From positions 16,678,001-16,742,000 of the forward strand of contig OZ241832.1 of NCBI GenBank assembly GCA_965202585.1: 64,000 bases of DNA, given 5' to 3'. Source of the DNA: Thalia democratica (taxonomy: Eukaryota). A program made the position numbers and the translations under genes. The notes under the pieces were generated by a model. It had not been told where the DNA came from and did no database searches. It worked only from the letters and a program-made list of their open reading frames with translations. Below, piece by piece: positions 4,414 through 40,247 of the stretch (within the stretch, counting starts at the first letter, position 1; each line of letters begins with the position of its first letter).

Positions 4414-6289
4414 ATTTACAATAATAACATATTTAAAAAAAATATTTATAATTTAAAGCTCTTTTTGTCATATATTTAGTGGTTTATTTTCCTAGTTTTC
4501 TTAAATTTTCTAGGTTTTCAGAAATTTTTCAAGATATTTCATTATTTTTCCAGGATAAAAGACAAAACTATTTTTGGCCATAGTTAAAAATAAATTGTTG
4601 TTAAGTTATCAAAAGTGTTTTTAGATGAATATAAATTACTTACAAGGCAATTTAAATACTTATATTGCTGGCAAAATTTTGTTTACTTCTATTGCACAAT
4701 GTACAACTTTTTTATCAATTTTTTTAAAGTTTTTCTTGTATGATTATTTAAAAGTTTACTATCTCTTAATTTCTAATTAAATAAAAAATGTTTTTGCATT
4801 ATGTTTTACAATAGAATATTAAGATTATTATTACTTTAGATAAGTATGTCCTGTAATATCATTACTTTTTTAATTTTGAAACTTTAATGAACTACAAAAC
4901 TAAACTTTATTGTCTTAAAATGTCTATACTTACTAGTAAGTTTTACAAAAAAATTGTAAAATTAAAACAAACATAGATCCAAGCTTTTCATTGATTTTCG
5001 TAAAATATCTTTTAAAAGATATTTTTTAAATACAATAATTTTTATAAATTTCTAGGTATTTTTCAAAGTTTTTAAAAACTATTTTTCTTTTTTTTATGGC
5101 TAATAATTTGGAATCCTGTTTTCTAAGGATTCCAAGTTTTTTGATAGATCTGTTAAAACATGAAAAGGTCATACCAAATCTAAATTGAAATATGACAAGT
5201 TTCAAATAGTCACATTACATAAACAAATTATGGTTAAAACTTTAAAATAAAATAACAACTTCACAAAGAAATATAACTTTAACTAAGGTTTTTAATTAAA
5301 ACAACTGTAAATAACAAATAAATAAAATGTTTAAAATGCATAAAACTTATCCTGAAATAACCATCAATATTAAGCTTTAGCTTTGCAGATAAAATTTAGG
5401 GCTATACTAAAGTTAAATTAAGAATTGAAATAAAAAAACTTACAAGTTATCATAAGAGAAAAGCCAGAATGTTAAAAGATCCAAATTAGGTTCATGAGCA
5501 AAAACATAAAATGGTAGTGATAAACTAGTTTTTTTAACATATAGATAAATCAAAATGTTTATAGATAATTCATATCAGAATTTGCATACGTTATAGTTTA
5601 AGGTATAAAAAACAGATTATAAAAAGTGTTTTAAAAGCTACTTTTAGACCAGCGTACAAAATACATATAGTTTCATAAATTTTAAAGGTTTGCGTTTTTA
5701 AATAAAAATCCTATTTTAAAAACAATGTTTTATTCTTATCTTTTTGTTAGTTAAGTATAATAAAAGAATTTTTAAAACTAGTTGTAATTTAAGATTAATC
5801 AAACTCATACACTTTAATTTGAAAACAAAATACTTGACGTCGATATTTATACAAACCAGTGTGATTAATAATAACAAACAAAAATTCATTATGATATTAT
5901 TTTTAATTTTAAAATTATTTTTCTTATTGCAGAGTAACATGAGTTCTGTTGTAGTACAAACAAGTGTAGTATATTTATATGGTAATGTTAATACTTAATT
6001 GGACTTAACTAATAATATTGATGATAATTTGATAACATAATTTTAGCTATCAACTGTTACTGATTACTACAATACATATTATTGTAACATATAAAAATAA
6101 TTTTATACTTAACATTTAAAAATAAATGTTCTGCAACAAATTTACTATATAAGATAAGTTTCTAATATAACTTTAAAAGTTACTATTATTTTTTGAAATC
6201 AACTGCAATCGAGTTTCTTTTAGCAAAACTATATACAAAAGTTAAACCTTTATTTTTACTTAGACATTGAATAGAATTATAAAAAAGCA

Positions 6290-7774
6290 ATGGATAGTTC
6301 ACTATCAAATATAGTTGATTCTGGTTTTTATGTAAATATAGAATGTGAGGTTAGTAAAATAAAATAATTGACAATAGTTTTTATAATATATTTTAATGTA
6401 TTAAGCATCTATTTGAAAAAAGAATTAAAACTTACTTACGTTTTTATTGTGCACGTTTTAGTATATTGTTAAATTATAAGTTAATAGTTTATCTTAAATG
6501 TTACACATTAATAAATTGTAATATAAGTTTATGTTAAGTTAGGTTCGCATATATATATGGTTAGTATAAACAAGATAAAACTTCGGCTACCATACAGCTA
6601 AGGCTAGTTTGTTACTAAAATTGAAATTAATAGTTTCTGTAATCCATATTCGGCTGTACTGTTAAAAATAGTTATCCTTTCAGTTTAAATTTACGTTAAT
6701 ATTACCAAGCAAGTTTATATGGCTCCTTTAAGTACCCTAAAAGGTATTGTGCTTTCTATAATAAAACTTATGTGCTTAATTTGTTTTAACTTTTCATATA
6801 TTTAAAACAGTATTTTTTGAATTTTTGTGAATTAAAATTTTATGAGTTTTATATCAGCTTAAACTAAATGTAAACTGCGCTCAGTAAACTTTCATACAGA
6901 TCAGATAACAAGGTTTTTTTTATGTTAAAATGCTTTCTTATATGCTTAACTTTTACATGCTAAAGCGTGCATAAATTTAAAGTAGACGTTAAAATATATG
7001 ACTTAAAATCACTACAACTTTAGTAGTTTGAAACGTTTTAAAATAAAACAAATTTAATATTGTTTAGTTTCATTTTAATTACTTGAAATATATAACAATT
7101 TGTTTTAGCTAAGTTGGAACAAGTTGAAAGAAAATCTTGAAAGGACGTATCAAACTTGGGAAAATTTACTTCAGGGTATTAGAAATATTTCTGATTGTGA
7201 ACAGTTTCAAAGGACTTTATTTCAAAACATTAATTTTTTTGATACTGAATTTGATAATAAGGAACAGTTTCTAACAAAAAATAAATCTGAAATCGATAAA
7301 GAACTGATTGAGAATAACGAACGCCTAGATGATTTGAAAAAGCAATACAATGCAACAAACATGATTAAGCAACTGGCTATCCTCCAACAAACTCAGAAGT
7401 TACAAGTAATTAGAAGAAGACGTACAAATATCAAGCAATCTGAAATTAAACTTTGGACGATTCAAAGGAAATATTGTCAAAAGGTAAGAGAAACAGTTGA
7501 ACTTCATACTAATATATTTTTGATTTTAGATCAGCAACAAAATGTTAACCAATCACAAGGCTTGTCTCAAGAAACAATTCAGACGTTCCATCTTTTTACA
7601 GCTGATGAGTCACATGTTGGTGATCAATGTAGTGTTTGTATGGAAGCCATAGACGTTGGTAGAAGAATGAGACGTCTCACTTGCGATGGACAGCATAGTT
7701 TTTGCCAGCAATGTATTGAACGATAGTTTGCTGAACACAACACATGTCCTCTCTGTAGGCATAAGTTTGATTAA
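6290..7774 (+). CDS. Coiled-coil + C-terminal RING-HC (C3HC4) E3 ligase-like gene, 2 exons (6290-6349, 7109-7774), interrupted by an in-frame TAG at 7724-7726 (nonsense allele or young pseudogene)
   Basis: ATG at 6290; 60-nt exon ending GAG|gttagt; acceptor tgttttag|CTA at 7109, in frame with ORF 7124-7726. The RING reads CSVC-x14-C-DGQ-H-SF-C-QQ-C-IER*FAEHNT-CPLC-RHKFD*, so the last two zinc ligands lie after the TAG. Confidence 0.85.
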
Positions 7775-9195
7775 AATTATTTTTACAACTATAAACGTTT
7801 TGTGTTTTAAATAGTTGTCATTGAAGTTCATTGTTATCAAATGTTTTAGCAATATTCTATTATCTTTTTATAAACTACATGATAAAATAATTTAAGTGTA
7901 TGTATTTTGTTTTTTACAAAATATTTTTGTTTAGGTTTGCCTTTTCTAAAGTCAAATGTATGTAAATTTGAACATATTGTCTTTTTTGTATTTCGGTTAG
8001 TGCATAAAAAACAAAATGTTTCAGTTAATAGCTAAAAAATGTTTTTGTATTTTTACAGTATAAAATTGTCTAAATTAGGTTATGTTCGACAGCTAGTTAG
8101 TTGTGTATTTATAATCTGTCCAGTTTTTAATTTTTTTTTCGGTTACTATTCGCTTTATATAAATAAAACTTGAACAACTGATTAAGAATTTTTCTTATCA
8201 AAATTTTGAGAAAAATTATTTTCATACAACTATTTAAATTTTTCACTTGATTTGTGTACTAAACTTTGTGTAAAAAATTATATTAAATATAATTTAGCTG
8301 TAAATACTAAAACTGTCTCTTCTTTTTTAAAGCAAGTCATCTTTAAAACTAAACTTGGATTTATGACAAGTTTGAAGTGGTAAGATATAATTTTATTTAC
8401 GTTCATCACAGACTTTAAAACAGGAATACATGTATAAACTTTTTAAGTGAGCAAGTCTTTCTCTTAAGTACTCACAAATCCGAAGTAAATATGAATATTA
8501 CTTTTAGACTGAATTAAAGTACTTAAACTCAAATAAAATTAAATAGAAAATTTTTTTTAAATATCAGACTAAAAACAATAATTTAATTTTTTTTAAACCA
8601 TCTCGTTTCAAAAACCGTTAAATTTCAACAAGTGTATTTAGGTTTTTCTTTTAATTTTAATCAATAGATAAAAATGTAATGTTCATTACAGTGGTCGTAA
8701 TTGACTTTTTTATTGTACAGAATATTCTGTATTATTTACATAAAATACATTTATCCAATAGAAAAGAAATCGGATACCGCCCTAAATGCAGTTCGCAAAT
8801 TAAAAATGTGAGGCTTACATTATAACACTTTTTTTAAAAACTTACATTAAGACTGTATTTAATATTCTTAAATTTCTTATGCTTAATTACAGTTGTTTTT
8901 TTTTACATTTTAAAATCATAAAATATATTTGATACTAATCAATTCAATTAATTTTTAAAAGTGCTCGAGCGGAACTTATTTTCTCTTTATAGCGAATTTT
9001 TCTTAGAAATGTAGCTTATAGTTTTGTAAATACAACTTTACTTGATTTAAGTGTCTTTTCGCTAAAAAAATGTAGAATAAAGGTAACCAAAATAATTTTA
9101 TAACAATTCCTTAACTGTTATAACAATTATTCTTTAATAATTATAGTTCCAACTTTAATATCTCTACAATCTAGTTTACTTCTTGCAAGAGATGT

Positions 9196-9467
9196 AAAAG
9201 GGTTGTTCATACCAATTCGATCATCAGACCACAACCTTTGGTAGACCGAGACCTATTTATCATTGCTAACAAATGGTTGCTACATGTGAAAAGTTGAAGA
9301 CTGCAAGTTTGTCGGTTGTGACTGACTGATGAGTCCTAATAAAGACGATCCGGTCTCGGTCTACTGAATCTTGTGGTCTAGTGATCAAATTGGTATGGTC
9401 AACCCTTTTGTAAACTTGAGCTTGTCTCACAGCATACGAAAGTCTAGGCTTCTGCTCTGCAGACTTT
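9196..9467. other. GC-enriched structured element: long imperfect inverted repeat (arms 9196-9253 and 9352-9409) plus a 3' stem-loop (9439-9467); candidate structured RNA or non-autonomous element
   Basis: Hand pairing of the 58-nt arms gives 49 Watson-Crick pairs, 4 G-U and 5 mismatches with no gaps, around a 98-nt loop. An AAAGTCT...AGACTTT stem follows. A diverged copy lies at about 25278-25430. Confidence 0.7.
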
Positions 9468-9749
9468 TGCCGTTGTTTTTGTCGACTGCAAGATACATAT
9501 GTGTAGATAAATTTCACAAAAATTTATAACTTACAAGATAATAGATACCTACTTAATAAATACGCATGTTAAAACCGAATGGTTATAGAGAAAAAGCGCA
9601 CTTTAAGTTTTAATAAAATTATAAAATAAATACAAATTACTTAAAAGATATAAGATGTAACCATAGAAGACGTTAAATCCTGGAGATCCTGATAAGCTAA
9701 GCTTATCGGAATATATACCACAGATGTTTTTGTGTCAAAACTTTATTCC

Positions 9750-9803
9750 GACTAACGGCGTTTCACTGCTCTCAAATACATTTAAGAACAGATCTACGGA
9801 GTC
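9750..9803 (-). ncRNA. Degenerate type I hammerhead-like motif (possible Penelope pLTR remnant)
   Basis: Minus strand GACU-CCGUAGA-U-[CUGUUCUUAAAU/AUUUGAGAGCAG]-U-GAAAC-GCC-GUU-AGUC, then AAUAAA. Stems I, II and III are in hammerhead order, but the core CUGANGA has 2 substitutions. Confidence 0.4.
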
Positions 9804-11558
9804 TCAAGCTTTTTTGCGGCCTGCCGACTCAAGGTTTAAAGTGATGTTTTTAGTATAAGACAAATAAATATATTTCATTTGACGGCTACATTAATACACC
9901 ATACCATACAAATTAATGCATGTTTCGTAAAAATTCTGTAAATATCATGATAATTTTTTTATCAAAAAATTTTTTACATTTCTAATCATGACGTTATGAA
10001 ATTTTGATCGCGTCCGAAAACTTTAATAAAATATTAGCGTCCAACATAAAACACAAATTTAAAACTTGTAATATTTCAATCCAACGAATAAATTTGGTTG
10101 ATAATGGCTCGGAAAAAGAAAAGCAAGTCTGCCAAAACACCTTTGGCGAGCGGTTTTTTAAGTTATTTCAATTTGTATTGTTAATTTTGTTTATTATATT
10201 TATATTGAATCAGTTAACAAACTATTGTTATAGATTTCAGAAGTTTATTGTTAGTTACATAAGTCAAAATGCAAGTTTGATACAAAATTGTTAGGAACTC
10301 GCATTTACTTAAGTTTATAAAAAACTAAAAAAGGTTTCTACACATCTTAATTTAATGCTACTAATGAATTAATTAGTAATTACCTGAACATGCTTTAAAA
10401 TTTTTGACAAAGTCCAAAGTGACAAGCAAAAATGTAACTGAAAAAATGCAAATTAATTTGAAAAATTAATGATTATGTAAGTTTTTTATAACTTATTTTC
10501 ACTTTACAAATATTTATATTCTCTGTAACTGACAATAGTTAAAAATTTACAGACTGCAAAAAATGAAACAACTTCTCTTGAGCTACAAAGCATAGATAAA
10601 AATCTTAAGTGAGTAAGATATAGTTTGTATATAAATTTTATTCACCAATTAATTACGCAAGAGTCTACGAGTGAAAAAATACATAAAAAATAGTTTTAGT
10701 ATGACAAAGTGTAAAATATTTTGTTCTAACTATTTCTTAGTACAAACTTGAAACTTATTTTTTTTTAAAAACAAACTTTAACATTTTAAAAATGATGCAT
10801 ATAATATACGTAATTATTAATGAATGAACATAAAGTACAAAAGTTTCATAACAACTATAAAGTTTACTTTATTACAGAAACGCTTAAAACTAACAAACAA
10901 ATTTCATTATGAAAAAATTAATTTAGTTTAAACAAAACTTTGTACTTATTTAAAACGTGGTAGTTATTAAAAACTAAGATAAATTTTGTACTAAACTTAC
11001 TTTAAATATTTACAGGAAAAAGTCCGAAAAGCCGGTTTTTGGAGTAAGCTTTGTTGATTTTTATATACAAAAGATCTATATCTTGTGTTTTATATGGTAA
11101 AAATATATATGTCAGTTTAATGCAAATTAAGCAAAACAATATTAAAAAAGCTTTATATTAATATTTGCTAATAATAATTTAATTATAGAAAGGTTGTTTA
11201 AGAAGTATTAGAATGACGTAACGTGCTGAAAAAAAAAGTGAGTATAAATCAAAATAATAAACAAATATAAAAACAATATCAAAATAAAATAAAACATAAT
11301 CTAAACTATTTGTGTTTTTGTTCATTAGTTAAGTATAACTTTTTACATAAAAAGAAGTCTTAATTAAAAAACAAAATGTATTAAATGTTTTTATTTTATT
11401 TTTAATAGCAAAATACCTGTTAAACATTGTTTAATTTTGTTTTTTCATTAAACTGTTAATAAATAATATAATTAAGCAATAACTATCAATCAACATCCAT
11501 TTATATTAACAGATCGGATTTGGTATTAATATTCTTCTGCAAGTCGAAATCGTTTAAT

Positions 11559-16635: not shown

Positions 16636-19123
16636 TTAGCAGATATAATTGTTAACAGCATAAGCATACTTAAAATATGACTTAAATCCAGGTGAGTCAA
16701 CTCCATCTCTCCAAACATTAGTGTCTAGGTTGTAGATTTCCATAGATTTTGGGGAGTCATATGATCCACCAATAACATAAACGAGGTTTCCAACACTGCA
16801 ACAAGCGAAATTGCTTCGAGCATTTTTCATTGGAGCCATCATTACAAACTTGTTTGATTCAGGAGAGTACATCTCAACACTGTTAGTTTTACTTTCTTCA
16901 CAACGTCCTCCAAACGCAAACAATTTATCATTATAAACGATGACTTGGTGGTCTGATCTTGCTTGTACCATTTTTACTGGCGATAAAGACGTAGTATTTG
17001 AAATTGGATCATACACTTGTATTGTGTTGACTGGTGCTAAGTATTCAAAACCATCATCGTCGTAATAAGTTTCCATTCCCCCGATAATCCAAAACTTATC
17101 AAAGTATTGAACAACAGTAAGATATAAATTTTCCGGTTGTCTTATTGTCTGAAAGCTATAATCAACAACTTTTTTGCTATTTGTGTCTATTAACTTGCAA
17201 AAGGGATTATAAAAATCTTGAAAATCGAATAAGTTGTTTCCAGCTAGACATGATGCATAAAGGCTATTCCTTTGATCTATTGTATCTTGTGGTAGCTTGT
17301 AAAACTCGTTGTCTAGTATTGAAATCCCTTTTATGTCAACTACATATATTTTGTTGTTGATTTCATGAATATCACATATGTCACCAACTAAATGTGGATA
17401 TTTGTTTATTCTAACCCACTTTTTATCGTCTAACAGATACTGGTAACTGTATTCGTTGTCGGAATTCACAACCACGATGGCTTTTGCTTCTGTACGATCA
17501 TCTTCTTTAACTTTCACGTTTTCACCTAAAATTTTTACATTGGTTAGCATAAAATAAATTTTTTATAAGAATAAATAATTTTAATTGTACAAAGTATGTT
17601 ATCCGTTTTAGTTTAAAAAAATCATTGAATTTTAGAAGTGTTGTTTTGAATTGTAAAATTTAAAACTATCAAGTTTAAATGATTTTGTAAGAAAAATTAA
17701 TAATAACCAAGAATCTTATTATCATAAGTTCTTTACATCTATCTAGTGGCAATAAATGAATATATTCTTTTAAAAATGAAATTTGTGTAGAGATAATGAT
17801 ACTGTTTAAATAAGAATAAAAAACTGGAGTAATTACTTATAGTACTTAATTTAGGTAGTAAAATTAAAATTAGTGTTTATAAACAACAATTTAATAAATA
17901 AGTTATATTGATTTCTATATATCATTTTCATGTGACATTATACATATAATTTTAAGTGGCTTATTACAATATGTTTTCCTTAAGAGTTAACTCTCGGAAT
18001 TGAGGTGATTTTCTTTTCAATACAAATTTTATGCTCTCAGGATGATCTATTTAACCGTGTGTTAAGAAGAATAAACTTAAATAGTTCAAATTAGAGCAGA
18101 AAAATAATTTAAGATATGAAAATTGAAAAAAATTAGGGTTACTTAAATGATTTTTAATTTAATTTTGATCTTTTATCAAAATGTTTAAACATAATTCAAT
18201 CAATTAAAAAAGGTTCATTAATTAATTTCGTTTAGCTCTTCATCAGAATAAACATGCTAAAAGCTGATAATAATATAGTGCAAATTTAGTTATAAACAGT
18301 AATTTTTAAATACATAGCTAAAAATTGTTACGTCATAAAGCATACAAGTATCTTTAAATTATAGTTGAGTTATACTTAGCTGACTTGAAGTTGTTTGTAA
18401 AACAAAAGTGTTAAAACAAAACAAAATCCGTTATTAGCACCAGTTTTAATATTTGTCATAGGTTCAATTTTTTTTTTAACTAGCAGCACTTCTACAGATC
18501 AGAGAAGTATTTAAACTAGCTATGTAAAGCAAACTAAAAAACTAATTAGTTTTGTTACAAGCCAAAATTAACTCTGTAGAGCAGTGTTAACTTAGCTGAA
18601 AAATATTATAAGTTGTACAACATAAATATTAACTAACTTTTACTTATGATATCTCTATCCAAACTACTCATGGAAGACAATTTTTCTTCTAGTTTCGTTA
18701 TTTGGGATTTCAAAACTTTGTTTTTCACTTCTTCATTTTCCAGTTTTGAGCGCAAATCTTCTTTTTCATCTGAAGCCTTTTGTAATTTATCTCCAACTCT
18801 AAATTCTTATTTTCTAGGTTTACAATTCTTTCAAAGAACAACTTCTGCAGGTTTTTTGTGGATTCTTCGTAAACTGTCAAGATGCTTTTAGTTTGATTAG
18901 ATGATCCTCTGTACACAGGAACTGCATCTTCTTTTTTAGAAGGGTAAAGCTTTTGCACAAAATTGTTTCTTGTAACTGAAGACCCACATTCAGGACAAGT
19001 TGAATTGGTATCCAACCATTGCTGAAGACACCCATTGTGATACAGATGTCCGCAGTTCAAGACTGAAATTTCTTCAGTACAAAAATTTATATCTTCTTGA
19101 CAAATTGCACAACTTACTGACAT
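16636..19123 (-). CDS. RING-H2 / coiled-coil / Kelch gene, copy A; exons 19123-18638 and 17525-16636; 1-nt deletion near 18792 shifts the frame (disrupted as sequenced)
   Basis: TRAIP-like N-terminal RING (CAIC...CGHLYHNGC...W...CPEC). After correcting the 1-nt deletion the frame matches copy B up to DIISK A|GTTAGT (phase 1). Acceptor atgCTAACcaatgtaaaaattttAG|GT GAA (phase 1) enters the Kelch frame of ORF 16636-17550, which has GG...Y...W repeats. Confidence 0.8.
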
Positions 19124-19772
19124 TTTTTAAAGTTCTGTAACAAAATGATAACAAAAACTTTTAATTTTTTAAAACAAAATCCATGATGTGTTTGTTTAAG
19201 TATCATGAAGAAATAAAGTTTTAGTTTTTTGATATTAATTGTCAAATGATTATGATAAAAATATAAGTTATAATTGATTTAAACACAACTAGTTTAACTT
19301 TCCATGAAAACTTTATAATTTTTAAAAATCTTTACAAAATATGGACTGTGTTTCACTCACTTTATTAGTACTACTCGACACAAGTAAATTCTATTTATTT
19401 ACTATTTACCTATTTATAAGATTTAATATTTTATAACTGATAGGTTCTACTTGAGACTAATTCATATAAATCAGACAAGGCATATTGAGAAGTAACAATT
19501 ACTATTGAACAGTTTGATTTAAGACTAATTGAGAAGTATTTTTTAAAACAACGACAAAAAAATAATCGAAATCTCTATTTTAAAAAAGTGAGTAACTTTA
19601 AAAACTTTTATAAATCACTTGGCATAAGTTGAAACTTAATAATAAACCAAGTTTTAGTTAATTAAACTGTAAAACGATTAAAGAATCTTCGACAATTTAA
19701 ATCTATATAAAAAAACTTAAAACAATTAACTTAAGATAAAAGAAATTAGCAATAAAATATAAAAGGCTTAAT

Positions 19773-26018: not shown

Positions 26019-28253
26019 TTAACAGATATAATTGTTAACAGCACATGCATATAAGTTCGATTCCCATTCAGGTGAGTCAATTCCATCTGTCCAAACATTA
26101 GTGTCTAGGTTGTAGATTTCCATAGATTCTGGGAAGCCGTATGATCCACCAATAACATAAACGAGGTTTCCAACCCTGCAACAAGCGAAATTGCTTCTAG
26201 CGTGTTTCATTGGAGCCATCATTACAAATTTGTTTGTATCTGGTGAATACATCTCAACAAAGTTCAGATTACTTCCTTCATATTGTCCTCCAAACACAAA
26301 CAACTTATCTTTATAAACGATGGATTCGTGACAATGTTTTGCTTGTATCATTTTTACTGTTGATAAAGACGTAGTTTTTGAAACTGGATCATACACTTGT
26401 ATTGTGTTGACTGGTTCGAAGAATGCATTACCATCATATTTTTTTTCTAATCCCCCGACAATCCAAAACTGATTAAAGTAGTGAACAATAGTAAAATACA
26501 AGTTGTCTGTCTCAAGATTGCAGTCGACCAATTCTTTGTTTTTAGTATCTAACAACTTGCAAAAGGGATCAAGATAATCTCGAAAAACCAATAAATTGTT
26601 TCCAGCTAGGCATGATGCATAAAAGCGATTCCTTCGATCTGGATCAGATGCAACTGGTGGTAACTTGTAAAACTCGTTGTCCAGTGTTGAAATTCCTTTC
26701 ATGTCAATTACGTAGATTTTGTTGTTGATTTCATAAATTCCACGTATGTCACCTACTAACTGTGGATATTTGTTTATTCTAACCCACTTTTTATCATCTA
26801 TCAAATACTGGTAGCTGTATTCATTGTCGAAACTTGCAACCACGATGGCTTTTGCTCCTGTTCGATCATCTTCGGTAATTTTCACGCTTTTACCTAACAT
26901 TTTTATGTTAAACTTTAAATCGGTTAGCAGAAAATAAATTTTTATAAGAATAAATAGTTTAAATTGTACAAAGTATGTTTTCCATTATCTTTGAAAAAAT
27001 TCATTGAGTTTCAGAAGCGTTGTTTTTAGTTGTAACATTAAAAACTTGATAGTTTTTAATGATTTTGTAAGAATAATTACTTAGTACCAATAATTTAATT
27101 ATCAAAGGTTTTTCACATGTATGTACTGACACTAAATAGTATATTTCTATTAATAATATTAAAAATTAAATTAGTGTATAGGTGTTGGTACTGTTTAAAT
27201 AAGAATAAAGTTTTAGTAAAGATCTAAAGTTTTTAATTTAGTTGATACAATTGAAAGTAGTGTTTATAAAAAACAGTTTAATGAATGAGTTATTTTGATT
27301 TCTTTATATCATTTTCAATGTGTCATCGTAGTTATTATTTCATGTTGTTTATTACAACATGTTTGCTTACGAATTAACTTTGAGAATTGAGCTGAATTAC
27401 TTATATATACAAGTTGTATGCTCGAATGATAATCTATTAAACCATGTGCTAAGCAAAGTAAAAATAAATAGCTCAAATTATAACATAAAAAAATTTAAAA
27501 TATGAAAATTGAAAAAGTTAAGGTCACTTAAACGATTTTTTTCTTTACTTTTGATCCTTTATTAGCACCAGTTTTGATATTTGTCATAGTTTTAAGTTTT
27601 TTTTAACTAGCACAACTTCTACAGATAACAGAAGTATTTTAACTAGCTTTGTAATGAAATCTAAAAAAAACGTCTTACTTTTGTTGCAAACCTAAACTAA
27701 CTCTGTAGAGCAGTGTTTTATAAGCTGAAAAATATTATAAGTTGTACAACATAAATATTAACTTACTTGTACTTATGATATCTCCATCCAGACTTTTAGT
27801 TGAAGAAAATTTTTCTTCTAAACTCTTTATTTGGGATTTCAAAACTTTGTTTTTCACTTCTTCATTTTCCAGTTTTATGCGCAAATTTTCTTTTTCATCA
27901 GAGGACTTTTGTAAATTTTCTTCCAACTGTAAATTCTTGTTTTCAAGATTTTCAATTCTTTCGGTGAACATTTTTTGCAGGTTTTTTGTGGATTCTTCGT
28001 AAAATTTTAAAATGCTTTTAGTTTCATCAGATGGTCCTCTGTACACAGATTCTTCATCTTCTTTTTTAGAAGGGTAAAGTTTTTTCACAAAATTGTTTCT
28101 TGTAACTTCAGATCTACATTCAGGACAGGTTGAATTGGTATCCAACCACTGTTGGAGACACCCATTGTGATACAGATGTCCGCAGTTCAAGACTGATATT
28201 TCTTCAGTACAAAAATTTATATCTTCTTGACAAATTACACAAGTTATTGACAT
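26019..28253 (-). CDS. RING-H2 / coiled-coil / Kelch protein, copy B, intact; exons 28253-27767 and 26893-26019; 453 aa if no extra exon
   Basis: Exon 1 is 487 nt ending ACA A|GTAAGT (phase 1). Acceptor ...aaaatgttAG|GT AAA AGC (phase 1), with a CTAAC upstream, joins the Kelch frame. The total of 1362 nt is an open frame, and the junctions match copy A. Confidence 0.82.
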
Positions 28254-28959
28254 TTTTAATGTTCTGTATCAAAATTTTTAATTTTCTAGTTTTATAGATC
28301 AAAATATATAATATGTCGTTTTTAAAGTTTTATGTAAAAATAAAGTTTTAGTTTTTGTTATATAGTACGTAAAACTAATACGATAAAAAGCTATATATTA
28401 TAACTGATTTACACATGAATAGTTAAATTTTCAATGATTAATTTTATAAAGATGCATAATAGGATATAGATTGCACTACACTCAACTTATTGTAACTACT
28501 CAGCATAAGTAAATACTACTTTATTTACTTAATATGTTATAAATACTAAATTATATTTTAAATTACTTTATAAGAATCAGACAAGACAAATTGAACTGAG
28601 TAATGTATCTTTTATAAAAAAACGACCCAATAATATGACAAATCTCTATTTCAAAAATATAGTTACTTTTTGAAACTTTTACAAATCACTTGACCAAAGT
28701 GCAACTTAATAATAAACCTAGTTTTAGTGCACTAAACTATAAAACAATTAAAAAATTTTCAACTATTAAAATCTTTTTCAAAAGACTTCAAACAATTAAC
28801 GAAAGCTTTAATAAAAACTTTTTTTTAAGCAAAAAATATGAATCTCTTAATAAAGTATATAACATTTAAATGTAACTAAAATAATATAAAGCGTTTAACA
28901 TAAAACCTTTATGTTAATTCAATATTCAAACAATATCTACAACAACATACATAAAGAAG

Positions 28960-37630: not shown

Positions 37631-40247
37631 ATGAGTAAAAGTGGATCAAAGTTTAATCAGTTTTCTTCAACTGTTAGTTCACCTACCAGCATTTCAACAA
37701 AAAGTCAATCTAAATTGCTGAATAAATATATTTTGAAAAATAATGCTAAAGGTTTAGAATTTGTGAAAACATGCAAAGAAATAGTATCGTCTCATATTGG
37801 TTTTGAAAAAACAGGTAGGTTTTCTCAACCTTCTTCTTGTTTAATAATGTACCTGTAAGTCTGAGGTACAGTACTGACGTTTGTTTTTAAATTAAGTAAA
37901 CTTTAACTCTTAATAAAAACACAGTTCTTTTTTGTGCTTGAACCAAGTAATTCTCTAAAGTATTTTTATTTACTCTCAAAAAAGTTATATCAGAACAATA
38001 TTATATTGAGCAACCATAAGCAATTCGAAAATGTGTTAAAATATTTTATATAGATTCTCTTGACTACTACCTGAAAGAATTTGTGAAAACATGCAAAGAC
38101 ATAGTATTGTCTCGTTTTGGTTTTGGAAAATTAGGTAAGTTCTCTTAACTTTCTATTTGTTTGATAATTTACCTGTAACTATGAGGTACAGTACTGACGT
38201 TTTTTTTTGTTAATAAGTACGCTTTAACTCTTAATAAAAACGCAGTACTTTTATGTGCTCTAACCAAGTGTTTTTCTAAAATATTTGTTTTACTCTAATA
38301 AAAATTATATTAAAACAATATTACTTTGAGCAACCATAAGCAATTTAAAAATGTGTCAATTCTTTGAGATTTTCTTAACTACAAATAATAAAAGAAATAA
38401 ATCTTGATGTTTGACTTAACATGAGCGTATAATATATAGTATAGAAATAAAACTTAGACTATCACTTAAAAATCTAAATAAAAAACACAATTTTGCGGTA
38501 GTTTCGGGTTTGAATTTAAAAAATCGGATATTTTACAAAACTAGCTTTTTTTTTTTTGGTTATGTTTTTGTTGAGTATACCTTTTAAATTTGGTTTAAAG
38601 TGCTCAATGATATAAAACACAAGCACCTTTATAATAAGTTAGTCAATAAAGAAATTACAACTGAAACGACAGTAAAACAGTGTTTTTTATATTTGTAACT
38701 ATTTTTGCAATAAGTAATCTTAATGATAATTATAATTTTTAAATACCTTATAAAGTACTTTTAAGCAATATACTTAATAAAATAAGAAATAAAAAACTGT
38801 AAAGACTTTATTTTGTTAATTTAATTTGACAATTTTTTTAATTTCTCTAATGGTATTTGTGAAGTATAGGACATTAACAATATTTTAACTTTATTAACTT
38901 GTGCAACAGAAAACGAAAATGCAAAGAAGTACAAATCTTTTAAGCAAATGAAAAAAGCAAATATTATATTGGATGAACTTAAAAAAGAACATTTTTGCAA
39001 GTTAATGCAATCTGAAATTGATGTAAATAACTTCTTCGTATATTATAGTTGCTCAAGGATTTTTAATCTTAAAAGCTTGTCTGATAGTTCTCTTTTATTT
39101 CTTGAGCGTTCTTTTCCATTAGTTGCAGCATCTAAAAGTTTTGTTGAACTAGATAACAAATATCTTATACATTTGTTTTCGAGCAGCAAGTTAGCTGTAG
39201 ATTCAGATCTACAACTTTTCAATGCAGCTTACAGTTGGTTAAACTATAAAAAAGCCGAACGCAGCAAATACGCAAAGTTTATTTTGTCAAGGTACTGTCA
39301 ACTTATAGATCTATCGCCGACAGTTACTTATATTTTAGATAAAAATTCCCACTTTGTAGTCCGTGACGAAACTTATAAGTTGATGAATGAATACTTAAAT
39401 GACCAAAAAGTTTTCAGTACGAACGATGACAAAGCTAAAACACTATCAAATATTACAAATCATATGAAACAAATGAAAGGTGGTAAACAGGCCTCAAAAT
39501 CAGTTTGTATAAATAACGAAGTTTACGTATGCGATGATGAGGGTGTCTCAAAATACTCAACTGCTGATAAAGCCTGGCAAAGAGTGTCTGTTCACGACGG
39601 TCTTTATCATAACATTGGTTCGAGTCAAAATTTTTGTGTATGTGCTTTCAACCAAAGCATTTATATCATAGGAACCCAACGGGGAAGCGAATGTTTAAAA
39701 TTTAATACAAAAAACCAAGCGATGATCAAAATTTCCACTACAAAAGAAGTAAGAATTTCAGCTGCTTGCTCGGTATTTCAAGGGAAAATAGTTGTTTCAG
39801 GTGGATATGATAAAATTTTAAGAAGTGTTGAAGGCTCAGGTTGGTGTTATGAACGGGAAAATCTGAAGACTGTGGAAACATATGATCATGCGGCAGACTC
39901 ATGGTCAAGAATGCCAAACATGGTTAAATCAAGACATCATCACAAATCAGTAGCAATAAGGAACAAGCTGTTCGTGATTGGAGGCGTTGACTCACCAAGT
40001 TGCGAAGTGCTTGATTCAGATTGTAAAAAATTTGTTTTGTTAAGAAAGGTGCCTAGATTATTTAAAATTTGTCTTTATTTTTCCCGAAGAAGTCAATGTA
40101 ATGGGAAGTAAGATTGTTGTGTTTAGTTGTAAGAACGGAGTTCTGTTTTACGACACTGTCAATGGAGTGTGGTCAAAGAAACCTAGCTATAAAAAAGAAG
40201 ACAATTCACTGATCTTTTTTTCTACAATACCTTTAACAGTGAGATAA
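37631..40247 (+). CDS. BACK-Kelch protein without a recognisable BTB domain; exons 37631-37814, 38054-38134 (symmetric), 38910-40247; 1-nt frameshift in a T-run at about 40078-40082
   Basis: Phase-1 donors ACAG|GTAGGT and TTAG|GTAAGT, phase-1 acceptors atatag|AT and caacag|AA. ORF 38948-40111 has BACK-like (SSSKLAVDSDLQLFNAAYSWL) and Kelch motifs. Removing one T continues YFPEEVNVMGSKIVVF...YDTVNGVWS...TVR* to 40247. Confidence 0.75.
37756..38375. repeat. Tandem duplication with a period of about 320 bp spanning an exon end and intron start
   Basis: agaatttgtgaaaacatgcaaaga...gaggtacagtactgacgttt...gagcaaccataagcaatt occurs at 37756 and 38076. Confidence 0.9.

What the first reader, a model, noticed from the sequence alone, without database searches (positions are those of the whole stretch)
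26019..28253. Hidden RING-H2 / coiled-coil / Kelch fusion gene: a candidate single-chain E3 ligase family
The ORF track shows separate RING and Kelch ORFs. In both duplicated copies, however, the RING-coiled-coil exon ends in a phase-1 donor and the Kelch frame begins at a phase-1 acceptor with an upstream CTAAC. The apparent Kelch start ATG is not conserved between copies (ATG vs CTG), as expected for intron sequence. Established knowledge: animal Kelch substrate receptors usually act through BTB-Cullin3, while RING-coiled-coil-propeller ligases use WD40 (COP1, RFWD3, TRAF7) or NHL (TRIM-NHL) repeats. Inference: a TRAIP-like RING directly fused to a Kelch propeller would be a Cullin-independent ligase with an unusual architecture. 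The copies differ most in the propeller, suggesting diversifying substrate recognition.
Basis: partly seen in the sequence, partly recalled or inferred. Interest (0 to 1): 0.8.

Follow-up and report, generated by a model that had tools for sequence, protein, structure and literature searches.

The report
Spliced RING–coiled-coil–Kelch ligase gene family
The separate RING and Kelch reading frames are two exons of one gene for a probable self-contained ubiquitin ligase, one of well over 100 copies in this genome that differ most on the face expected to bind targets.

Summary
On the minus strand, 27767-28253 (RING-H2 plus coiled coil) and 26019-26893 (six-bladed Kelch propeller) join across an 873-nt phase-1 GTAAGT...TTAG intron into a 453-aa ORF.

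- **Genome-wide pairing.** There are at least 135 Kelch and 150 RING exons. For all 30 best Kelch places, a RING exon lies upstream on the same strand.
- **Splice sites.** 34 of 38 loci keep a phase-1 GT/AG pair, mostly at the same motifs. 26 of those 34 have no ATG before the Kelch domain.
- **Uninterrupted forms.** One paralog is a single 436-aa RING-coiled-coil-Kelch ORF. A poly-A-ended marine contig from a relative reads AGTACAA straight into the Kelch exon.
- **Copy 2 (16636-19123).** It carries a 1-nt frameshift in the assembly.

No RNA run exists for this organism, so expression of this copy is untested. Ligase activity, cullin independence and dimerisation are inferred. Substitutions concentrate in the propeller's top-face loops, but dN/dS stays below 1.

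RING+Kelch without BTB has precedents (Dictyostelium KeaA, a C. elegans protein). I found no paper on this TRAIP-like, hugely expanded version. This scan had already noted the same family on other pieces of this genome.

The parts
27767..28253 (-). Copy 1, coding exon 1 (487 nt): Met start, RING-H2, linker and coiled coil. It ends AGTACAA| in phase 1.
   Evidence: The RING ligands are invariant or nearly so across 28 paralogs.
28113..28244 (-). RING-H2 domain (aa 4-47). Ligands are C5, C8, C24, H26, H29, C32, C43 and C46. I7, W36, P44 and R47 are the residues typical of E2-binding RINGs.
   Evidence: Pfam zf-RING_2 1.3e-11; PDB RING-H2 matches RNF126, AMFR and RNF4; alignment A2.
27798..28025 (-). 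Coiled coil (aa 77-152), predicted to form a parallel in-register homodimer.
   Evidence: complex prediction: ipSAE 0.56 against a best control of 0.01; runs agree in at least 87% of contacts; partner pLDDT 78. This is a model only.
26894..27766 (-). Phase-1 intron, 873 nt, GTAAGT...TTAG. It is less conserved than the exons.
   Evidence: Against paralogs the intron is 65-81% identical, while the exons are 80-89%.
26923..26927 (-). CTAAC branch-point-like motif about 30 nt upstream of the acceptor AG.
   Evidence: It is present in only 5 of 34 paralog introns.
26019..26893 (-). Copy 1, coding exon 2 (875 nt including the TAA stop): short linker plus a complete six-bladed KLHL-type Kelch propeller.
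   Evidence: Pfam Kelch_1 3.3e-22; AlphaFold2 pLDDT 88.6, pTM 0.89; Foldseek TM 0.74-0.78 to the KLHL17, KEAP1, KLHL3 and KLHL28 Kelch domains over residues 12-289.
28264..28275 (-). Pyrimidine-rich acceptor-like site (ttttgatacAG) ending 10 nt before the ATG. It may be a 5'-UTR intron acceptor or a spliced-leader acceptor.
   Evidence: An AG lies 8-12 nt upstream of the ATG in 29 of 38 paralogs, including distant ones. The function is inferred.
18638..19123 (-). Copy 2, exon 1 (RING-H2 plus coiled coil). One base is missing between 18793 and 18792, so the ORF stops at 18725.
   Evidence: Public DNA runs hold contigs with the extra base at exactly this place. In X1 that is all the depth, and in X2/X3 about one copy's worth.
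17526..18637 (-). Copy 2 intron (1112 nt, GTTAGT...TTTAG). It holds a high-copy repeat at about 18192-18473.
16636..17525 (-). Copy 2, exon 2: intact Kelch propeller exon.

Best explanation
The stretch 26019-28253(-) is a two-coding-exon gene for a 453-aa protein. From the N-terminus it has a TRAIP-like RING-H2, a coiled coil, and a complete six-bladed KLHL-type Kelch propeller. It has no BTB or BACK domain.

The gene belongs to a family of well over 100 copies. These are arranged mainly in two large arrays on one chromosome.

Proposed mechanism (inferred):
- The RING recruits a charged E2.
- The coiled coil makes a parallel dimer, which places two RINGs at one end and two propellers at the other.
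- The propeller's top face (BC and DA loops) binds the substrate.
- Each protein would then be a self-contained, cullin-independent ubiquitin ligase, and the paralogs would differ mainly in what they bind.

Shown here: the gene structure, the domain folds, the family size, and where the variation lies.

Inferred: expression of this copy, E3 activity, dimerisation, and substrate binding.
For: **Gene structure**
- The phase-1 donor and acceptor were read directly.
- For all 30 best Kelch places, a RING exon lies upstream on the same strand, 0.3-5.6 kb away, on at least 8 chromosomes or scaffolds.
- 34 of 38 loci keep a phase-1 GT/AG pair, most at the same motifs (AGTACAA|GTTAGT and YAG|GTGAAA). 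The first ORF's stop often lies inside the donor.
- 26 of 34 loci have no in-frame ATG before the Kelch domain.
- Exons are more conserved than the intron, and dN/dS is 0.24-0.40.

**Uninterrupted and cross-species forms**
- L034 is a 436-aa uninterrupted RING+coiled-coil+Kelch ORF in the same genome.
- P0007/L073 is a poly-A-ended marine contig, 85-88% identical at the DNA level to paralogs. It reads AGTACAA directly into the Kelch exon.
- P0007 aligns in one piece with the spliced models of L050, L057 and L058, whereas every genomic match to it starts near residue 77.
- P0275 is a RING+coiled-coil exon carrying the same tail (94% identity).
- L158 shows the same two-exon layout and donor in another organism.

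**Domains**.

**Dimer model**: score 0.56 against a best control of 0.01. The mark was reached by 21 of 30 proteins solved as pairs of one chain and by 0 of 23 solved as single chains.

**Variation**: 40 of 53 hypervariable sites lie in top-face loops, Fisher p = 5e-9.
Against: - No RNA run of this organism is available, so splicing and expression of this particular copy are unobserved.
- L073 is not a clean full-length mRNA. Its 5' 660 nt are non-coding and resemble a repeat found in paralog introns, and it comes from a different subfamily and species.
- Many paralogs are broken, including copy 2 in this window.
- No biochemical evidence exists for E3 activity or for cullin independence.
- dN/dS is below 1 in all site classes, so relaxed constraint on loops could explain the variation.
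Confidence: 0.8

Rival explanations
1. Two independent genes lie side by side: a small RING+coiled-coil protein and a Kelch-only protein. They could, for example, form an operon whose second gene receives a spliced leader at the TTAG acceptor.
For: Copy 1 has an in-frame ATG 7 nt before the acceptor. Both ORFs are intact on their own. The one transcript-like contig, L073, lacks the RING.
Against: - 26 of 34 paralogs have no ATG ahead of the Kelch domain.
- The copy-1 ATG is not conserved in copy 2.
- The first ORF ends only because of the donor consensus.
- L073 carries the exon-1 tail fused in frame to Kelch.
- L034 is one continuous ORF.
Confidence: 0.04
2. The gene model is right for the family, but this copy is a silent or decaying member of a degenerating tandem array.
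For: - Copy 2, 9 kb away, is frameshifted.
- Many paralogs carry stops or split RING exons.
- There is no RNA evidence.
Against: Copy 1 has an intact 453-aa ORF, a consensus GTAAGT donor, all eight zinc ligands and the R47 linchpin. Pairwise dN/dS against paralogs is 0.10-0.57.
Confidence: 0.1
3. The protein is real but is not a self-sufficient ligase. The RING and coiled coil might serve only for assembly, or the protein might act as a scaffold or cytoskeletal adaptor, as some Kelch proteins do.
For: No activity data exist. Some paralogs, including copy 2, have Gly instead of the Arg that follows the last zinc ligand.
Against: All RING-H2 ligands and the usual E2-contact residues (I7, W36, P44) are conserved under the strongest constraint in the protein, with dN/dS 0.24.
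Confidence: 0.08

Closest known systems
BTB-BACK-Kelch (KLHL) substrate adaptors of Cullin-3 ligases (KEAP1, KLHL3, KLHL17, KLHL20, KLHL28)
   Same: A six-bladed Kelch propeller with the same fold over its whole length: TM 0.74-0.78 and sequence E-values down to 1e-28. The variable loops are the ones that bind substrates in KLHL proteins.
   Different: There is no BTB and no BACK domain. A RING-H2 and a coiled coil sit in cis, so no cullin or RBX1 should be needed.
TRAIP (RING-H2 plus coiled-coil E3)
   Same: The RING-H2 sits at the very N-terminus, followed by an (I/V)xKLYP-type motif and a coiled coil. The exon is 34% identical (E 2e-20) to this genome's 446-aa TRAIP-like ORF L035. Atlas lists TRAIP-like clusters at 0.87, which is a lead only.
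   Different: The C-terminal half is replaced by a Kelch propeller. That L035 is the TRAIP orthologue was not verified here.
TRIM ligases (RING, B-box, coiled coil, SPRY or NHL), including expanded immune subfamilies
   Same: The logic is the same: RING, then a dimerising coiled coil, then a variable C-terminal recognition domain. Both show large lineage-specific tandem expansions with variation on the binding surface.
   Different: There is no B-box. The coiled coil is predicted parallel, whereas TRIM coiled coils are antiparallel (established knowledge). The recognition domain is Kelch rather than SPRY or NHL.
Dictyostelium KeaA and C. elegans 5P24 (RING + Kelch, no BTB)
   Same: An N-terminal RING and six C-terminal Kelch repeats without BTB. 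The authors describe this combination as 'not common' (PMC2920877).
   Different: KeaA is 1207 aa with a C3HC4 RING and a cysteine-rich middle region, and it is a single gene. Homology to the present family was not tested, and no E3 activity is reported there.
RING-coiled-coil-WD40 ligases (COP1, TRAF7, RFWD3) and plant F-box-Kelch families
   Same: A catalytic or adaptor module is joined to a beta-propeller receptor. The F-box-Kelch family is also greatly expanded.
   Different: The propeller type differs (WD40), or the catalytic route differs (F-box through SKP1-CUL1).

Membership tests
RING-H2 E3 ligases | C-x2-C-x(9-39)-C-x(1-3)-H-x(2-3)-H-x2-C-x(4-48)-C-x2-C zinc-ligand pattern | tested here: met
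   C5, C8, C24, H26, H29, C32, C43 and C46 are present. They are invariant or at least 90% conserved in 28 paralogs. Pfam zf-RING_2 1.3e-11.
RING-H2 E3 ligases | E2-dependent ubiquitin transfer | not testable with these tools
   Only the usual E2-contact residues (I7, W36, P44, R47) can be seen.
Kelch beta-propeller (KLHL type) | Six four-stranded blades with the GG / Y / W repeat signature | tested here: met
   Pfam Kelch_1. AlphaFold2 gives 24+ strands at pLDDT 88.6. Foldseek gives full-length matches to six-bladed KLHL domains.
BTB-BACK-Kelch (KLHL) CRL3 adaptors | N-terminal BTB domain and BACK domain that bind Cullin-3 | tested here: not met
   There is no BTB or BACK hit in either exon. 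The exon-1 tail joins Kelch directly in P0007 and L034. This gene is not a KLHL member.
TRIM / RBCC | B-box zinc finger between RING and coiled coil | tested here: not met
   No zf-B_box hit at E <= 0.1.
TRAIP | N-terminal RING-H2 followed by a long coiled coil | tested here: met
   34% identity over 162 aa to the TRAIP-like L035.
TRAIP | TRAIP-type C-terminal region (PCNA-interacting tail) and one-to-one orthology | tested here: not met
   The C-terminus is a Kelch propeller, and the family has more than 100 copies. It is TRAIP-like in its N-terminal half only.
RING+Kelch proteins without BTB (KeaA-like architecture) | [quoted passage not shown] | tested here: met
   Common descent with KeaA was not tested.

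The most novel reading that the evidence does not exclude
The more than 100 RING-coiled-coil-Kelch paralogs could form a germline-encoded recognition repertoire, an invertebrate counterpart of the expanded antiviral TRIM families. In this reading, a constant dimeric RING/coiled-coil ligase module carries a rapidly diversifying Kelch top face that recognises pathogen or non-self proteins and marks them with ubiquitin.
Probability: 0.2. Interest if true: 0.75.

Novelty: new variant of a known kind. Interest (0 to 1): 0.55.

Why it matters
Kelch propellers are textbook cullin-3 adaptors. Here the same receptor is wired directly to its own RING through a dimerising coiled coil.

The design has then been multiplied to well over 100 tandem copies, whose differences concentrate on the binding face. 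That offers three things:
- a natural test of whether a Kelch receptor can work without BTB and cullin;
- a compact single-chain ligase scaffold;
- a candidate rapidly evolving recognition system in a marine invertebrate.

It also shows that ORF-based gene calls on related metagenome contigs split this family into "RING-only" and "Kelch-only" proteins. That may be why the architecture was not visible in the sequence searches run here.

Tried and rejected
- **RNA evidence.** Two searches for sequencing runs found only three DNA-type runs and no RNA. Read laying therefore could not test the junction. I used it on copy 2's frameshift instead.
- **Scan of JGI metagenome contigs with the RING+coiled-coil alignment.** The pattern caught only generic RING-H2 genes (at most 52% identity), and none had a Kelch next to it.
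- **Exhaustive representative search with L034.** Giant multi-Kelch proteins dominated the results. Only P0231, P0139 and P0136 were useful.
- **Word-indexed searches.** These found no protein with both RING and Kelch Pfam domains.
- **BLASTP of exon 1 of copy 1 against P0007.** It found nothing. The link appeared only with the spliced models of the L050/L057/L058 subfamily.
- **CTAAC as a family-wide branch signal.** Rejected: 5 of 34 introns.
- **Neighbouring ORFs.** The BACK-Kelch ORF (38948-40111) and the RING ORF (7124-7726) are not close relatives.
- **Site-wise selection test.** It needs ancestral states.
- **Full-length fold of L034.** Not run, because the mixed alignment A3 misaligned the RING rows.
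- **The dimer result.** This is a model that 'supports binding; it does not show it'.

Full report
**What is there.** The window is very AT-rich (about 23% G+C). It is part of an 802-Mb animal genome, at C8:16.68-16.74 Mb. On the minus strand, an ORF at 27735-28253 encodes a RING-H2 finger followed by a coiled coil. An ORF at 26019-26900 encodes Kelch repeats.

Reading the DNA, the first frame passes ...AGT ACA A|GTAAGT, with its last exon base at 27767. The second frame opens after TTAG| at 26893. The split codon is A|GT, the intron is 873 nt, and the joined ORF is 453 aa. CTAAC lies about 30 nt before the AG.

**Copy 2.** The second copy (16636-19123) has the homologous donor (AAAA|GTTAGT after 18638) and acceptor (TTTAG| before 17525). 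Its exon 1 lacks one base between 18793 and 18792 compared with its nearest paralog L041. In the assembly, the frame from the ATG therefore stops at 18725.

Contigs of three public DNA runs carry the extra base at precisely that place. In X1 this accounts for all the depth. In X2 and X3 it accounts for roughly one copy's worth of a larger total. This fits a recent, strain-specific frameshift. Cross-mapping from L041 cannot be excluded.

**Is it one gene?** Searching the whole genome gives at least 135 Kelch-exon matches and at least 150 RING/coiled-coil matches (the tool says these are lower bounds).
- For all 30 of the best Kelch places, a RING exon lies upstream on the same strand, 0.3-5.6 kb away.
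- The same holds for distant paralogs (35-55% identity) on C1, C4, C5, C6, C7, C9, C10 and unplaced scaffolds.
- In 38 loci examined base by base, 34 have a phase-1 GT...AG pair, mostly at the same motifs. Exon 1 typically ends AGTACAA|GT(T/A)AGT, so the first ORF's stop is often the TAG inside the donor. Exon 2 typically begins YAG|GTGAAA.
- 26 of those 34 loci have no in-frame ATG ahead of the Kelch domain.
- Both apparent Kelch start codons in this window are unconserved between the two copies.
- Exons are 80-89% identical between close paralogs, against 65-81% for the intron.
- All three protein regions are under purifying selection: dN/dS is 0.24 for the RING, 0.33 for the coiled coil and 0.40 for Kelch.

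**Uninterrupted and spliced forms.** One paralog, L034 (C5:60.05 Mb), is a single uninterrupted 436-aa ORF with RING (1.4e-10), coiled coil and Kelch (3e-40).

A contig from a JGI sample, L073, is 1791 nt long and ends in a run of A. It encodes P0007.
- Its DNA is 85-88% identical to exon-1 tails of L050, L057 and L058, and 78-85% identical to Kelch exons of the C8 3-Mb cluster.
- It reads ...AGTACAA followed directly by Kelch-exon sequence. The intron is missing exactly at the predicted donor.
- P0007 aligns in one piece with the spliced models of L050, L057 and L058.
- Every genomic match to P0007 in this genome begins near its residue 77, which is the junction.

The 5' 660 nt of L073 are non-coding. 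They resemble a repeat found inside long introns of some paralogs. L073 is therefore either a partly processed or chimeric transcript, or a 5'-truncated retrocopy. Either way it records a spliced exon 1-exon 2 RNA. That the sample is a metatranscriptome is my inference from the poly-A end.

Two further contigs add to this.
- P0275 is a RING+coiled-coil ORF found in four marine metagenome assemblies. It carries the same tail as P0007 (94% identity) and ends ...PST-S like this genome's exon 1.
- L158, a 3.5-kb marine contig, shows the same layout in another organism: a RING-coiled-coil ORF, AGTACAA|GTTAGT, about 360 nt, TTTTAAG|GT, then the Kelch ORF.

A more distant relative, P0231, has coiled coil and Kelch in one ORF.

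No RNA run of this organism could be found. The junction in this particular copy therefore remains unobserved.

**The protein.** The RING has all eight RING-H2 ligands plus the residues usual at E2 contacts (I7, W36, P44, R47). The ligands are invariant or nearly so in 28 paralogs. PDB sequence matches are RING-H2 ligases: RNF126, AMFR, RNF4 and RNF38. The exon is 34% identical over its whole length to L035, a 446-aa RING plus long coiled-coil ORF of this genome that looks like TRAIP. Atlas lists TRAIP-like clusters only at lead level.

Two copies of exon 1 are modelled as a parallel, in-register coiled-coil dimer (residues 77-152) with adjoining RINGs.
- The score is 0.56, against a best control of 0.01.
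- The runs agree in at least 87% of contacts, and the partner pLDDT is 78.
- The mark was reached by 21 of 30 proteins solved as pairs of one chain and by 0 of 23 solved as single chains. The tool's verdict is that the model supports binding but does not show it.

Exon 2 folds with confidence (pLDDT 88.6, pTM 0.89) into a six-bladed propeller. Its residues 12-289 superpose on the whole Kelch domain of KLHL17, KEAP1, KLHL3, KLHL28 and others (TM 0.74-0.78). The exon boundary is thus the domain boundary. There is no BTB, BACK or B-box.

**Variation.** I compared 26 close paralogs.
- dN/dS is 0.29 in strands, 0.64 in BC loops, 0.40 in DA loops and 0.42 in bottom loops.
- 40 of the 53 sites whose non-synonymous difference exceeds the mean synonymous one lie in BC or DA loops. 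These loops make up 39% of columns (Fisher p = 5e-9). They form the substrate-binding face in KLHL proteins (established knowledge).

This fits diversified recognition but does not prove positive selection. A site-wise test needing ancestral states was not available.

**Mechanism proposed.** The protein would be a self-contained dimeric RING ligase whose Kelch top face selects the substrate, without cullin-3.
- Shown: the gene structure, the folds, the family size, and the location of variability.
- Inferred: expression, E2 binding, dimerisation, substrate binding, and any biological role.

**Comparison with what is known.** The protein works like a TRIM or a COP1/TRAF7-type ligase (RING, coiled coil, recognition domain) and uses a KLHL-type receptor. 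It is a member of neither family, because the B-box and the BTB/BACK domains were tested and are absent.

RING+Kelch without BTB is documented as 'not common' in Dictyostelium KeaA and a C. elegans protein (PMC2920877). ESM Atlas holds several RING+Kelch clusters, one mainly cnidarian (lead level). Literature searches found nothing on 'RING-Kelch' as a class or on such an expansion.

Earlier notes of this scan describe the same family on other pieces of this genome and call the organism a tunicate. I did not test the taxon. The relatives I found are in marine (Tara) assemblies.

**Verdict.** It is a new variant of known kinds, of moderate to good interest.

Noticed in passing
window 28264-28275 (-), 19134-19146 (-), and 36 paralog loci: A pyrimidine tract ending in AG lies 8-12 nt upstream of the RING ATG in 29 of 38 paralogs, including distant ones. 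It looks like a 3' splice site for a 5'-UTR intron or for spliced-leader addition.
   Followed up: partly
L034 (G000:C5:60045111-60046421, -): An intronless 436-aa RING+coiled-coil+Kelch ORF. Fragments 92-95% identical to it occur in public data (P0139, P0136). It may be the older, conserved member of the family, or a retrogene.
   Followed up: partly
L032, L033, L035: Three single-ORF RING-H2 proteins with long coiled coils and no Kelch (436, 434 and 446 aa). L035 looks TRAIP-like. L033 is followed by an ORF of tandem 'NVDEQPTTSC' repeats.
   Followed up: no
window 18192-18473: A very high-copy repeat lies inside copy 2's intron. Its contig depth is 6,000-11,000, against about 75-105 for single-copy sequence in the three DNA runs.
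   Followed up: no
window 18416 to 19153: In runs X2 and X3 a contig joins 18416 to 19153 with 6 other letters between, which skips the whole of copy 2's exon 1. Its depth is about half the single-copy level. It could be a deletion allele or a paralog junction at the repeat.
   Followed up: no
G000:C8 12.37-17.32 Mb and 1.7-3.7 Mb: The family forms two mega-arrays. In the larger one nearly all copies from 12.37 to 15.75 Mb are on the + strand, and all copies from 16.32 to 17.32 Mb are on the - strand. A subset has an intact Kelch exon but a split or stop-containing RING exon.
   Followed up: partly
window 38948-40111 (+): A 387-aa ORF with BACK plus Kelch, probably the 3' exon of an ordinary BTB-BACK-Kelch gene. 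It is only 21% identical to the family's propeller.
   Followed up: partly
window 7124-7726 (+): A 200-aa ORF that ends in the first half of a RING finger, probably an exon of another RING gene. It is unrelated to the family's RING exon.
   Followed up: partly
L073 365-664; L044 4109-4228; L017, L023, L024: A shared element containing GGCCCGCGA repeats occurs 5' of the truncated transcript-like contig and inside the 4.5-kb introns of several paralogs. It may be a mobile element.
   Followed up: no
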